Positions 41,308-61,445 of a stretch of 64,000 nt of DNA are shown piece by piece. The notes beneath the pieces are model-generated. The model had not been told where the DNA came from. It saw only the letters and a program-made list of their open reading frames with translations, and ran no database searches. Source of the DNA: Schmidtea nova (Eukaryota); the NCBI GenBank assembly GCA_044892505.1, contig CM097882.1:248930001-248994000 (forward strand). Reading direction: 5' to 3'. Numbering within the stretch: the stretch's first letter is position 1; every line of letters starts with the position of its first letter. A program made the position numbers and the translations under genes.

Positions 41308-42035
41308 GTACAAATATAGGTATTTATTTTTACTAAAACAGATTTTCAAAAGCTTTCCACTGAAAGATAAAATTAATAAAAATTGACTAGATAATATCAA
41401 ATTTACTGAATTCATAACTCGATTTACTTGCTGAAATATAGAAAATTGTAATATTTTACCAATGATACTCAGAAAATGATCATTAATTTTCAACTAGCTT
41501 TTTATTGATACAAATAGAAATATTTTTTAAAATTTATTTTCGACCATATTACATTATTAATTTTGTACAAATAGGAATAAGTATTTACTGATACACTTTC
41601 ATCTATGATATTTTTAGCAGAACCTTGCTAGGAGAACGCACTTTGTGATTTATTATTATTATTATTAGTCTTAAAATTTTTTTAATTACATAAGTTATTA
41701 TTATTATTATTATTATTTTTTATTTTCACTTCTTCCTTTTTCTCAATTCTGATTTTAAGATCAAAATTTTCAATANNNNNNNNNNNNNNNNNNNNNNNNN
41801 NNNNNNNNNNNNNNNNNNNNNNNNNNNNNNNNNNNNNNNNNNNNNNNNNNNNNNNNNNNNNNNNNNNNNNNNNNNNNNNNNNNNNNNNNNNNNNNNNNNN
41901 NNNNNNNNNNNNNNNNNNNNNNNNNNNNNNNNNNNNNNNNNTACTCTCCTGTTTTTTTTCTGACGGGTTCTTTGACACTTTATTCGGGCCTGATCAGGTT
42001 TTAAGTGTAACAATGTATAGGCAGAATTTAATTCT

Positions 42036-42690
42036 CTACAAGATGGCTTTATTCAAAATTTAAATTGTAGTCTGTTGTGTTTTGCACACGTGTTTTGTAA
42101 TTAAATTTACATTTTTCATGTATATAAAATAACTTTTTTGAGTTTTCCTTGTAATATTATATGTATAAAATTTAAATGTCTACAAAATGGCTTTATTAGA
42201 AATCTGAAAGATGTCGTATTTTGTAATACACACGTGTTTTGTAATTAATTTTGCATTTTTCGTGTATATAAAATAAATTTATTGACTTTTCATTGTAATA
42301 AAGTATATGTAAAATTTAATTTCCTATAAAATGGCTTGATTAGAAAATTAGTTTGCTAGTGTGTTTGTAATACACACGTGTTTTGTAATTAATTTTGCAT
42401 TTTTCATGTATATAAAATAAATTTATTGACTTTTCATTGTAATAAAGTATATGTAAAATTTAATTTCCTATAAAATGGCTTGATTCAAAATCTAAAAAGT
42501 TGTCGTTTTTCTTGTTACACACGTGTTTTGTAATTAATTTTGTAAGTTTTAGTTATTTAAAATAACTTTAGTGAGTTTTCATTGTAATTACATATAGATA
42601 AAATTTAAATATCTATAAAATGGCTTGATTCAAAATTAAGTATATCGATATGTTTGTGATGCACACGTGTTTTGTAATAAAATACTGGGA
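42036..42690 (+). repeat. Tandem array of about 4.5 units of about 144 bp
   Basis: Anchor atggct at 42043, 42187, 42331, 42475 and 42620. Each unit contains the palindrome acacgtgt. Confidence 0.9.
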
Positions 42691-43079
42691 TTTTTTCGAC
42701 TATTTAGCATAGATTTATTGAATGTTTATTGTAATCATGTGTAGATATCATTTAATTTCTATACTAATGAAAATTATAAAAGTTTTGTGTGTGTTATTGA
42801 CAATTCTAATGTATTTTATCAAAATTAATTAAAATATTTTTTATAACTGACGTAATTATTGAAATGTAATATAATTTAGACGTAATTTACTGAAATATTT
42901 AGTCTAATATAATTTAATCATATGACATGCATGCAATTCATTGAAATATTTTATAACTTTGATGTGTATTATAATTTGTTGAAATAACTTTTCTAGTTTT
43001 TTTTTTAAAATACTGCAACGTAATATATAATTAGTCATAATTCTCTATCTGATGATAATAATACCTTTACTGCCTCTTA

Positions 43080-43200
43080 CTCGATTCTGATTGGCTAATA
43101 AGAATAAATTTCCTACCCCTTACTCGATTTTTATTGGTCAAAGGTTATGTGTGTGTAATAACTTTGATATATAAACAATCCTTTTTCATTCATTATTCAC
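43080..43200 (+). promoter_or_regulatory. Candidate Pol II promoter of the PolB gene
   Basis: Reverse CCAAT boxes (ctgattggct, ttattggtc), then tatataaa and a tcattc initiator-like motif shortly before ATG 43225. Partly conserved at about 12130-12230. Confidence 0.5.
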
Positions 43201-43224
43201 TTTTACAAATAATAAACATTAAAA

Positions 43225-58889: not shown

Positions 58890-59606
58890 CTATTTCCTCT
58901 TTTTAGCTATCTGCAGAACTGAAGACAGCGCATTTTCTGTGTTTTGTATTTGTACTTGTGTTTTTGATGTGACTTGAGAAGTAATAACTAATTCGTCCTT
59001 TTCCAGTGTGCGTTTATTGTTTTTTGTTGTACAAGTTTTCAACCACTGATCTATATTTAATCCTAAATTCATTTAGAAATTTATTTAAGTTTGAAATTAA
59101 AATAATGTAGAAACTTACCGATTGAAAATAGAGTTGATATTAATTAATAATGAAAATTGATTAATCGCAAAAAAACGAGTATTAAATTTATCACACTACA
59201 ATAGTCACGCTTTGTAACATTGGATCCATTTGAATTCTAGCACAAACCATTGTCATGTGATGATGCAAAATCTAGGATTGTTTCGTCGTGTGCGTTCGGT
59301 GTTTGACGCCGCCACTGCACCGCCTCGCGTTTAGCGTGAGTGGGAGCTCTTTTGTTTTGCATGGGTCCACGGCCCGTCAGACCTGGCAAATTTACTAGAT
59401 TTACCAAATTTACCTATGGAAAGCAAAAAACGCCGGCGCGGGGCACACAAAACTTTGAACAATATTTTGTGTATAAATAGTGAGCACTAAAACAATTTTT
59501 TGTCCAATATTTGCCACCGCTTTGAAACTAAATTAAGGCGGGAGTTATATTTTTAACATCCACCATTACTAATATTTTTTCGCGTACCCCGGGTTGAGAA
59601 TCACTG
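58890..59606 (-). mobile_element. 5' fragment of a hAT (Buster/Charlie-like) transposon interrupting the tandem array
   Basis: Terminal cagtgattctcaacc on the minus strand at 59606. N-terminus ..IDQWLKTCT...KKRK is typical of such transposases. Array sequence resumes at 58790-58889. Confidence 0.6.
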
Positions 59607-60653
59607 CTTTATTACAATGAAAACTCGATAAAATTACTTCATTTAGATGTAAAATACAAAATTTAATAACAAAACACATTTGCTTCACAAAATTCGACAA
59701 ACCAAATTTTCAATCAAGCCATTTTGTATAAAATTATATAAAATAATTTGAAATAGTTGAAACTTACAACCTTATCCACAAAACACATGTGCAGCACAAA
59801 ACACGACAATTTTCAAATTTCTAATTTTACACTTACAATATTACAATAAAAATTCAATAAAGTCCCTGTATATATGTGGAAAATACATATTTTAATACAA
59901 AACACGGGTGCATCACAAAATTCGACAATTTTTTTATTTTTAATCAAATCATATTATAACAATTTAAATTTTATATATACATTATTACAATAAAAACTCA
60001 ATAAAATAATTTGAAATAGTTGAAACTTACAACCTTCTTCACAAAACACGACAACTTTCAAATTTCTAATCAAGTCATTTTATAGAAACTTAAATTTTAC
60101 ACTTACAATATTACAATACAAATTCAATAAAGTTCCTGTATATGTGAAAAATACCAATTTTAATACAAAACACGCATACATCACAAAATTCAACAAATTT
60201 CTAATCAAGTCATTTTATATCAATTTAAATTTTATATATACATTATTTCCAATAAAAACTCAATAAAGTTAATTTAATTGAGTGAAAAATACAAATTTTA
60301 AAATTAAACACATGTATAACACGAAAAACGACAACTTTTAAATTTTAAATCAAACCATTTTATTGGAATTTAAATTTTACACATTTTTCATTACAGTAAA
60401 AACTTAATAAAATTAATTTGAAATAGTTGAAATTTACAAATTTAATTACAAAACTTGTGTGCAACACGAAAAACGACAAATTTCTAATTTCTAATCAAGT
60501 CATTTAAACGGAAATTATATTTTATCTCTACAATATTACAATGAAAAATCATTAGATACTTTATATAGATAAAATTTGTAAATTTAAGTACAAAACATGT
60601 GTGTATCACAAAATACAACTCATATTTCTAATCAAGCCATTTTATAGAAAATT

Positions 60654-60719
<66 letters not shown>

Positions 60720-61445
60720 CAATGAAAACTGAATAAAATTACTTTAGAAAGCTTAAAAATACAAACAAAACGCGTGTATCACAAAATACGACAGCTTTCA
60801 GATTTCTAATCAATCCATTTTGTAGAAAATTAAATTTTATCTCTACAGTATGACAATGAAAACTTATTAAAGTTACTTTATATAAACGAAATATGGAAAT
60901 TTAAGTACAAAACATGTATGTGTATTAAAACACATCAACAAACCAAATTTTTAATCAAGCCATTCTATAGAAAATTAAAATTTATCTATATGTAATTATA
61001 ATGAAAACTCACTTAAGTTACTTTAGATAGCTTAAAATGCAAAAATTAATAACAAAACACGTGTGTAACACGAAAAACGACAACTTTTAAATTTTGAATC
61101 AAAATATTTTATGAGAATTTTAAATTTCATCTATACTTTATTACAATGAAAATTCAATAAATTTATTTTATATACATGAAAAATGCAAAATTAATTACAA
61201 AACACGTGTACATTACAAACACACCAACAAACTAATTTTCTAATAAAGCCATTTTTAGGAAATAAAATTTTACTTATACTTTATCACAATGAAAAATACA
61301 TAAAGTTACTCTATATTGTTGAAAATTCAAAATAAAACACGTGTGCACAACAATATACGCAACATTTTGAATTTTTAATCAAGCCATTTTGTAGACAATA
61401 AAATTCTGTCTATCTATTGTTTCACTAAAAACTCGATCGGGCCGG
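59607..61445 (-). repeat. Tandem array of about 12-13 units of about 144 bp, inverted relative to 42036-42690
   Basis: Anchor aatcaag(c/t)cattt at 60203, 60348, 60493, 60630, 60808, 60953, 61097, 61242 and 61377. One unit is expanded by (TA)n. Confidence 0.92.

What the first reader, a model, noticed from the sequence alone, without database searches (positions are those of the whole stretch)
41985..61445. Two units with the same ends but different cargo: a possible multipartite or helper-satellite Polinton-like system
Element D (41985-48141, +) runs 144-bp array, promoter, PolB only, about 550-bp AT-rich end, terminal CCTACT. Element E (61445-51904, -) has the same cap and array at one end and the same about 530-bp end with AGTAGG at the other. 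Instead of PolB it carries three intact unknown ORFs (143, 231, 150 aa), a CCAAT/TATA promoter and decayed coding-like DNA, all oriented away from the array as PolB is in D. D shows no integrase, ATPase, protease or capsid gene. Shared cis ends around different gene sets recall segmented pPolB viruses (bidnaviruses share terminal sequences between segments) or a non-autonomous vector mobilised in trans. The alternative is an old inverted duplication whose middle was later replaced by unrelated insertions.
Basis: partly seen in the sequence, partly recalled or inferred. Interest (0 to 1): 0.85.

Follow-up and report, generated by a model that had tools for sequence, protein, structure and literature searches.

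The report
Two defective Polinton copies, shared ends
Two neighbouring, oppositely oriented remnants of a virus-like transposon (Polinton/Maverick) share the same end sequences. One keeps only a broken polymerase gene and the other holds scraps of host genes, so this looks like transposon debris, not a two-part virus.

Summary
D (41985-48160, +) and E (61445-51885, -) share a capped 144-bp array and a ~510-bp end finishing in CCTACT, and nothing in between. The multipartite or helper-satellite reading is not supported.

- The PolB belongs to an ordinary one-piece Polinton/Maverick family. Relatives carry PolB plus rve integrase, an A32-like ATPase, a conserved ~408-aa protein and a TBP gene. 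Remnants of the last two lie elsewhere in this window.
- D is an internal-deletion derivative. Its PolB has one in-frame stop and one frame change.
- E's 6.3-kb interior matches no Polinton gene. Its largest ORF is a chimera of an unknown-protein fragment and one degenerate exon of ribosomal protein S5. The other two ORFs are orphans with non-Polinton codon composition.
- The "gap" between D and E holds a third, heavily decayed PolB fragment with its own terminus.
- E has the terminal motif at one end only, and no target-site duplication.

D's PolB is far too intact for the 9-18% divergence between D and E.

Best reading: independent defective derivatives piled up in a Polinton graveyard. E is a shell whose interior was replaced by host filler DNA. 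Whether E ever moved cannot be tested here.

The parts
41776..41941 (.). Masked or gap stretch (N) 43 nt left of D's cap. It hides D's left flank and was left as it is.
41985..42763 (+). D: cap plus about 5 units of the 144-bp array. Each unit carries a CACGTG-type palindrome.
42764..43896 (+). D: post-array region with a 43-bp repeat holding CCAAT-type boxes, a TATA-like stretch and possible short 5' exons. Shared at 82-86% with copy A, absent from E.
43897..47567 (+). [quoted passage not shown] Broken by 1 in-frame stop and 1 frame change. It is the best-preserved of five PolB copies in the window.
47632..48141 (+). D: AT-rich right end finishing in the 16-nt terminal motif T (reverse complement of AGTAGGTAGATGTGTC), ending CCTACT.
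48142..48160 (+). 19 nt past CCTACT that still resemble the sequence past E's CCTACT (12-nt identical block at the same offset). Status unclear.
48161..49558 (.). 1.4 kb with no match to Polinton genes, to the relatives or to the rest of the window. Origin not determined.
49559..49840 (+). F: terminal motif variant (AGTAGCGAGATGTG) plus a subterminal ATCGATGAGTCAT motif. This is the terminus of an older copy from another subfamily.
49841..51891 (-). F: PolB fragment truncated at both ends and heavily decayed (about 4 frame changes and about 10 stops against relatives). It abuts E's end.
51885..52419 (-). E: copy of the end. Its terminal AGTAGG is kept, the next ~23 nt differ from D, then 24 nt are identical to D.
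52420..58765 (-). E interior: no similarity to D, to the window's other Polinton pieces or to six related Polinton loci. The 52.4-56.4 kb part is GC-richer and holds three ORFs and a CCAAT/TATA stretch. 56.5-58.8 kb is very AT-rich and ORF-free.
52916..53347 (-). ORF143: orphan, predicted as long helices with a basic tail, GC3 0.56 against 0.24-0.33 in PolB. It was not searched in the large protein collections.
53617..54312 (-). ORF231: a chimera. The N-terminal ~100 aa resemble one unknown 272-aa protein (P0121). Residues ~165-221 are a degenerate fragment of 40S ribosomal protein S5/uS7 (DNA 53650-53799), flanked by acceptor-like and donor-like signals.
54620..55072 (-). ORF150: orphan. No relative in 5.8 billion clusters, Pfam or PDB. 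Single-sequence model unusable (pLDDT 42).
58766..61445 (-). E: array of at least 12 units ending in the same cap as D. Interrupted by a ~715-bp unrelated insert at 58894-59606 and a (TA)n run.
61479..61502 (+). G: a second perfect copy of motif T (22 of 24 nt as at D's right end), 33 nt outside E's cap but pointing away from E. It is not a proper inverted terminus for E.
62937..63191 (-). Host-type protein kinase exon. It marks non-Polinton DNA within 1.5 kb of E's cap.

Best explanation
D and E are two separately arisen, now inert, defective derivatives of one ordinary (monopartite) Polinton/Maverick subfamily. They lie in a locus where such copies have piled up.

The intact element type, seen in relatives, runs: terminal motif T, a subterminal region, a tandem array and promoter, then PolB. 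A convergent block follows with a ~408-aa capsid-sized protein, rve integrase, A32-like ATPase and TBP, and the opposite terminus closes it.

D is an internal-deletion form. Everything between the PolB stop and the last ~510 bp of the far end is gone, and its PolB has since taken two disabling hits.

E keeps only the capped array and the far end of a related, earlier-diverged copy. Everything between was replaced by ~6.3 kb of non-Polinton filler that includes host gene scraps (a ribosomal S5 exon with its splice-site flanks). This is the outcome expected from template switching or gap repair, the usual route to non-autonomous DNA-transposon shells.

Shown: the shared ends, the unrelated interiors, the host-derived chimera, the broken PolB, the full gene set in relatives, and the age asymmetry.

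Inferred: the deletion and filler mechanisms, the independence of the two arrivals, and that neither unit functions now.
For: - **Shared ends, unrelated interiors:**
- **Family is monopartite:** PolB relatives at 55-70% identity sit in 16-22-kb loci with rve, an A32-like ATPase, a ~408-aa protein and TBP. Remnants of the ~408-aa protein (16784-17734) and of TBP (3832-3984) are in this window.
- **The terminal motif is a real terminus:** T recurs at the edges of other copies here (6440, 7367, 49559, 61479). Five matches were found against 0.18 expected. It also occurs in relatives from another data set.
- **D is a pseudogene:** its PolB has 1 stop and 1 frame change. Copies A, B and F are far more decayed.
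- **E's interior is not viral:** there are no Polinton gene matches. ORF231 is a P0121-like piece plus a degenerate uS7 exon. ORF150 has no relatives and no PDB match, and ORF143 has no PDB match. GC3 is 0.46-0.56 in ORF150 and ORF143, against 0.24-0.33 in PolB and 0.44 in the host kinase exon.
- **Age asymmetry:** D/E divergence is 18% in the end and 9-14% in orthologous array units. That predicts about 9-17 new stops in D's PolB if both arms had decayed in place. One is seen, so P is at most about 1e-3.
Against: - D and E end their arrays at exactly the same cap. They may also share ~19 nt beyond CCTACT. Independent insertions should share only what belongs to the mobile unit, so either these are part of the unit or the two are linked by a local event.
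- No TSD is seen for E, and D's left flank is masked, so an insertion origin is not shown for either.
- The divergence clock rests on AT-rich non-coding DNA that may evolve or align worse than coding DNA.
- The two breaks in D's PolB could be assembly errors.
- E's three ORFs are longer than chance allows. At least ORF143 and ORF150 could be real genes of unknown function.
- The genome is not available, so copy number is unknown.
Confidence: 0.55

Rival explanations
1. E is a genuine non-autonomous Polinton derivative that moved as a unit. It would be a PolB-less shell carrying captured host fragments, mobilised in trans by full-length family members (not specifically by D). D would be a second, PolB-only non-autonomous form.
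For: - Clean replacement boundaries with both end modules kept.
- D and E stop at the same cap, although the age asymmetry suggests separate arrivals.
- polB-lacking polintons with foreign cargo that stay mobile are reported in butterflies (bioRxiv 10.1101/2025.02.07.637071).
- A PolB-less arrangement also occurs at 14630-17734 in this window.
Against: - E has motif T at one end only. The T beside its cap is in direct, not inverted, orientation.
- No 6-bp TSD is seen at either candidate boundary.
- Only one copy is visible, and its terminal block differs from D's over ~23 nt.
- Its ORFs include a decayed host exon.
Confidence: 0.2
2. One old in-situ inverted duplication of a D-like copy (a palindrome with a 3.7-kb spacer), after which the middle of one arm was replaced.
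For: - Inverted arms face each other across a unique spacer.
- Both arms share the cap boundary, and possibly 19 nt beyond CCTACT.
- The array units are positionally orthologous.
Against: - Arms of equal age should be equally decayed. At 4.5-9% divergence per arm, D's PolB should carry about 9-17 stops and many indels, and it has 1 and 1.
- No PolB trace is left in E.
- It needs a deletion and a 6.3-kb insertion at the same two points.
Confidence: 0.12
3. The whole 41985-61445 span is one 19.5-kb Polinton. The arrays would be its long terminal inverted repeats, and its interior was later scrambled by nested insertions.
For: - The size fits a Polinton.
- The arrays are inverted, with the caps facing outward.
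- Host-type genes (a RING-finger ORF and a kinase exon) flank the span.
- The convergent gene orientation resembles the relatives.
Against: - The conserved terminal motif T would then be internal three times (48141, 49559, 51904). In copy A it lies outside the array.
- The interior holds none of the family's other genes.
- TIR arms that diverged 9-25% imply an age that does not fit the near-intact PolB.
Confidence: 0.08

Closest known systems
Polinton/Maverick self-synthesising transposons (polintoviruses; animal forms overlap with adintoviruses)
   Same: D has a protein-primed PolB of this kind. A 5'-AG...CT-3' terminal motif is conserved between this window and relatives. Relatives of the PolB carry rve integrase, an A32-like packaging ATPase and a capsid-sized gene in 16-22-kb loci (family definition as in PMC6431247).
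   Different: Neither D (6.2 kb) nor E (9.6 kb) has integrase, ATPase, protease or capsid genes. A paired inverted terminus and a TSD are not shown for either. They are derivatives, not members in working order.
polB-lacking, cargo-carrying polinton derivatives in Lepidoptera (bioRxiv 10.1101/2025.02.07.637071)
   Same: A polinton frame with polB lost and foreign DNA in its place. This raises the same question of mobilisation in trans.
   Different: Those elements keep the other polinton genes, are flanked by TIRs, and occur as several near-identical, recently inserted copies. E keeps no element gene, lacks a proper second terminus and is seen once.
Non-autonomous DNA-transposon shells with filler or captured host fragments (Ds-type deletion derivatives, Pack-MULEs, Helitron captures)
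   Same: The ends are retained and the interior is replaced. Exon-sized host gene pieces are fused into chimeric ORFs (capture described in PMC6431247).
   Different: The parent here is a PolB/integrase element. Capture by such elements through this route is inferred, not shown.
Bidnaviridae (bipartite ssDNA viruses with a Polinton-derived pPolB; my own knowledge of the family)
   Same: A pPolB on one unit, and the idea of units sharing terminal sequences.
   Different: Bidnavirus segments are each bounded by the same terminal repeats and together encode capsid and replication proteins. E encodes nothing viral, D's PolB is broken, and no protein search returned a bidnavirus or parvovirus-like hit.

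Membership tests
Polinton/Maverick (autonomous) | [quoted passage not shown] | tested here: met
   PF03175 on two ORF pieces of D (E = 1e-8 and 1e-17). 889 relatives found. The gene is broken twice.
Polinton/Maverick (autonomous) | Retrovirus-like rve integrase | tested here: not met
   No rve in D or E by Pfam or by tblastn with relatives' proteins. It is present in relatives L001, L002, L004-L006.
Polinton/Maverick (autonomous) | Morphogenesis module (capsid proteins, packaging ATPase, protease) | tested here: not met
   None in D or E. The window holds only a remnant of the ~408-aa protein at 16784-17734. That protein's capsid identity is inferred from size and position, with no Pfam hit.
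Polinton/Maverick (autonomous) | Terminal inverted repeats | tested here: inconclusive
   Motif T lies at D's right end. D's left end is hidden by the masked stretch. E has T at its inner end, and the copy by its cap is in direct orientation.
Polinton/Maverick (autonomous) | 5-6-bp target-site duplication | tested here: not met
   For E, the hexamers flanking either candidate boundary pair differ (read). For D this cannot be tested because of the masked stretch.
Non-autonomous Polinton derivative | Both termini of an autonomous partner retained | tested here: inconclusive
   The far end with T is retained in both D and E. A proper array-side terminus is missing in E and not visible in D.
Non-autonomous Polinton derivative | Several dispersed copies with the same interior | not testable with these tools
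   The genome is not available. ORF231 and ORF150 have no close relatives in the protein collections, and there is a single remote match, P0121.
Multipartite pPolB virus (bidnavirus-like) | Segments together encode replication and capsid functions | tested here: not met
   E's ORFs are a host-exon chimera and two orphans. No capsid-like match was found.
Multipartite pPolB virus (bidnavirus-like) | Intact genes on each segment | tested here: not met
   D's PolB has 1 stop and 1 frame change. The uS7 part of ORF231 is about 45-50% identical to ribosomal S5 sequences.
In-situ inverted duplication | Arms of equal age and equal decay | tested here: not met
   18% divergence in the end and 9-14% in orthologous units, against a near-intact PolB in D. 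P(at most 1 stop) is 1e-3 to 1e-6.

The most novel reading that the evidence does not exclude
The capped array and the T-bearing end could be the cis-acting ends of a modular replicon. PolB-only units (D), PolB-less units (the 14630-17734 arrangement) and cargo shells with captured host exons (E) would then all be propagated in trans by full-length Polintons of the same subfamily. That would be a helper and dependants community inside an animal genome. The recurrent junction of a terminal motif followed directly by an array, seen here and in relatives L001 and L002, would be a product of that replication mode.
Probability: 0.1. Interest if true: 0.6.

Novelty: new member of a known kind. Interest (0 to 1): 0.3.

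Why it matters
The evidence points instead to the ordinary fate of DNA transposons: deletion derivatives and shells with filler DNA, accumulating in a graveyard locus.

What remains useful:
- A concrete anatomy of this Polinton subfamily's ends: a conserved 16-nt terminus, subterminal motifs, and an array with an E-box upstream of PolB.
- An example of host-exon capture inside a Polinton frame.
- A comparatively young PolB-only derivative, which could help date activity of the family.

Tried and rejected
**Searches that found nothing**
- Exact look-up of ORF231 in public assemblies: not on record.
- Word-indexed homology searches for ORF231 and ORF150: nothing. Only the full HMMER scan revealed the uS7 fragment and P0121.
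- Pfam on all E ORFs: nothing.
- PDB sequence search for ORF143 and ORF150: nothing.
- Rfam and tRNA scans of the window: nothing.
- Internal LTRs or TIRs inside E's interior: none.

**Structure models**
- ORF150 gave pLDDT 42.
- ORF143 gave plain long helices at pLDDT 69.
- Neither was worth a fold search, so none was run.

**Homology beyond the accepted boundaries**
- No PolB remnant or promoter homology in E: not above shuffles.
- No similarity between the flanks outside the two caps.

**Ideas rejected**
- A Helitron-like reading of the CTAG-type end. The same motif is a Polinton terminus in relatives.
- E inserted into F with F's other half beyond E. No PolB lies in 61479-64000.

- The right ends of the relatives' contigs were not obtained, so their TIR structure stays open.
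- I made no scan of viral or metagenome contigs (see the disclosures in the full report).
- I did not build a spliced model of the possible 5' exons upstream of D's PolB, so the joined step was left out.
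Full report
**1. Setting**

The window is AT-rich (about 27% G+C) and eukaryotic. It has GT-AG short introns and CCAAT/TATA promoters, and an LTR retrotransposon with gag, protease and RT. 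It also holds a protein-kinase exon and a RING-finger ORF. I infer an invertebrate-type host but could not name it.

The window is a Polinton graveyard.
- Five PolB-bearing pieces lie at 25-428 (+), 12868-14629 (+, copy A), 21634-18285 (-, copy B), 43897-47567 (+, D) and 51891-49841 (-, F).
- There is a remnant of a conserved ~408-aa protein at 17734-16784 (-) and of a TBP gene at 3984-3832 (-).

**2. The observation**

- D has a cap and about five 144-bp units (41985-42763). A promoter region and PolB follow. About 65 nt after the PolB stop comes a ~510-bp AT-rich end finishing in CCTACT at 48141.
- E, inverted, has the same cap and at least 12 units (61445-58766). It has the same end (52419-51904) at 83% identity.
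- Array units near the cap are positionally orthologous: D3/E2 91% and D4/E3 86%. E's own units are 68-79% alike. The first unit anchor lies 56 nt from the cap in both.
- Between these modules the two share nothing. There is no blastn or tblastx hit, and local alignments just inside the boundaries do not exceed shuffles.
- Outside the caps the flanks are unrelated.
- Past CCTACT a 12-nt identical block sits at the same offset in both. This is suggestive, not proof: 5% of shuffles reach the score somewhere in 60 nt.

**3. What the ends are**

The last 16 nt of D's end are a motif I call T (AGTAGGTAGATGTGTC, read from outside inward).
- It recurs perfectly at 61479 (+). Variants lie at 7367 (+), 49559 (+) and 6440-6453 (-). 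That is five matches against 0.18 expected.
- The same motif bounds terminal regions in related loci from another data set: L003:4939 (+), L002:810-825 (-) and L002:2551 (+).
- At 7367 it lies about 460 nt outside the single array unit of copy A, upstream of A's promoter and PolB.

So T is the family's terminus, and the array is an internal, PolB-proximal module whose copy number varies (1 unit in A, 5 in D, at least 12 in E). Relatives also carry tandem arrays upstream of PolB, with other unit sequences.

Consequences for the two units:
- D's right end is a true terminus. Its left terminus cannot be seen, because a masked stretch begins 43 nt from the cap. I left that stretch alone.
- E has T, partly replaced, at its inner end. 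The T next to its cap (61479) points away from E, so it is a direct rather than an inverted repeat.
- No 6-bp duplication flanks E at either candidate boundary.

**4. What family this is**

D's PolB pieces hit PF03175, plus an Endonuclease VII-like motif.

Their relatives (55-70% identity) come from metagenome or assembly contigs. Six of these, L001-L006, all from one ENA sample, show the full element. PolB is followed on the other strand by:
- small ORFs;
- a ~408-aa protein;
- an rve integrase with a chromodomain-like tail;
- an A32-like ATPase;
- a TBP gene.

This is an ordinary monopartite Polinton/Maverick. None of these genes is in D or E.

**5. State of the genes**

| Copy | In-frame stops | Frame changes | Other |
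|---|---|---|---|
| D | 1 | 1 | full length |
| A | at least 9 | 2 | 3' truncated |
| B | at least 10 | at least 4 | |
| F | about 10 | about 4 | truncated at both ends |

The breaks in D could in principle be assembly errors.

**6. E's interior**

The three ORFs exceed chance: none of 2000 shuffles gave three ORFs of at least 143 aa.

*ORF231*
- It has no word-sharing relatives. The exhaustive HMMER scan found one real relative of its N-terminal ~100 residues, P0121, an unnamed 272-aa UniParc protein (E = 8e-30).
- The scan also found about 100 hits to residues ~165-221. All of those tested carry Ribosomal_S7.
- The PDB search aligns those residues to positions 48-100 of 40S protein S5/uS7, at a degenerate 45-50% identity.
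- Only this one exon-sized piece (53650-53799) is in the window. It is flanked by acceptor-like and donor-like signals.
- So it is a DNA-level copy of a host gene fragment, read through by an ORF caller.

*ORF150 and ORF143*
- ORF150 has no relatives.
- Neither ORF150 nor ORF143 matches Pfam or PDB.
- The single-sequence models are unusable (pLDDT 42) or plain helices.

*Composition*
- ORF143 and ORF150 have GC3 of 0.56 and 0.46. PolB has 0.24-0.33, and the neighbouring kinase exon has 0.44.
- The rest of the interior is ORF-free and partly extremely AT-rich.

The interior is therefore not a viral module.

**7. The "gap"**

48161-51884 is not empty. F's terminus (49559) and its decayed PolB run up to within a few bases of E's end. 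Similar juxtapositions occur at 14630, where copy A's truncated PolB meets a left-end-type region homologous to 7462-7695. The same is seen in relatives L001 and L002. Copies in this family tend to sit against each other's ends.

**8. Age argument**

D/E divergence is 18.4% in the end (96 of 522 aligned sites, 8 indel events) and 9-14% in orthologous array units.

If both arms had decayed neutrally since a local duplication, D's PolB should have gained many stops:

| Divergence per arm | Expected new stops | P(at most 1) |
|---|---|---|
| 3% | 5.9 | 0.02 |
| 6% | 11.7 | 1e-4 |
| 8.5% | 16.6 | 1e-6 |

With the lowest unit-based estimate (4.5% per arm) I calculate about 9 stops and P of about 1e-3. 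About 27 indels would also be expected at the observed indel rate. D has one stop and one frame change. D is therefore much younger as a dead copy than the D/E split. This argues against an in-situ inverted duplication, and against one 19.5-kb element with array TIRs. It favours separate arrivals from lineages that diverged while still active.

**9. Conclusion**

- D is an internal-deletion, PolB-only derivative.
- E is a shell with host filler.
- Neither functions now.
- The pairing is best explained by the piling-up of copies.

A non-autonomous, once-mobile E cannot be excluded (about 0.2). polB-less polintons with cargo are already described in butterflies, so even that reading would be a new member of a known kind.

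Noticed in passing
window 7883-11756: An LTR retrotransposon (gag zinc knuckle, aspartic protease, RT on the minus strand; 125-bp LTRs 93% alike) is inserted inside the single array unit of Polinton copy A. It splits the unit into 7828-7882 and 11757-11830.
   Followed up: partly
L001:15883-16317, L002:15192-15626, L006:13925-14368; window 3832-3984 (-): The related Polintons carry their own TATA-binding-protein gene (PF00352, E = 6e-18). A remnant lies in this window. A full-text search found no paper linking TBP to Polintons or Mavericks.
   Followed up: partly
window 45274-46158 (within D PolB); relatives P0007, P0028, P0031: An Endonuclease VII-like (PF02945) zinc/HNH-type motif sits in the N-terminal half of this PolB clade. 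It is also readable in fragment F.
   Followed up: no
window 14630-17734: A left-end-type terminal region (homologous to 7462-7695, with clustered ATCGATGASTCAT palindromes) is followed directly by the small ORFs and the ~408-aa protein remnant, with no PolB between. This is a PolB-less arrangement, complementary to D.
   Followed up: partly
L004:1-11633: In this relative, PolB points the same way as the morphogenesis block. In L001, L002, L005 and L006 the two converge. The PolB module is inverted in at least one copy.
   Followed up: no
L001:1-1035, L002:1-825, L003:4939-7100: A terminal region of at least 2 kb with poly-G/C runs and ~500-bp repeats is shared at about 90%. It is inverted relative to PolB between L003 and L001/L002. 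In L002 a second T motif lies at 2551, just upstream of PolB.
   Followed up: partly
window 42025-42763 and 58766-61445: Every 144-bp array unit carries a CACGTG-type (E-box) palindrome. The arrays may act as enhancers for the PolB promoter (inference only).
   Followed up: no
window 58894-59606: A ~715-bp GC-richer insert interrupts E's array. The array resumes at the same unit position on both sides. It holds two small ORFs (56 and 60 aa) with no Pfam match.
   Followed up: partly
L005:14488-15477: A MATH/TRAF-domain gene sits inside a related Polinton next to TBP. It may be a host-derived cargo gene.
   Followed up: no
window 40782-41237 and 62937-63191: Host-type genes bracket the D-F-E cluster: a RING-finger (C3HC4) ORF on the left and a protein-kinase exon on the right.
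   Followed up: partly
window 51910-51932 vs 48112-48135: In E's end, the ~23 nt between the terminal AGTAGG and a 24-nt block identical to D are replaced wholesale rather than point-mutated.
   Followed up: no
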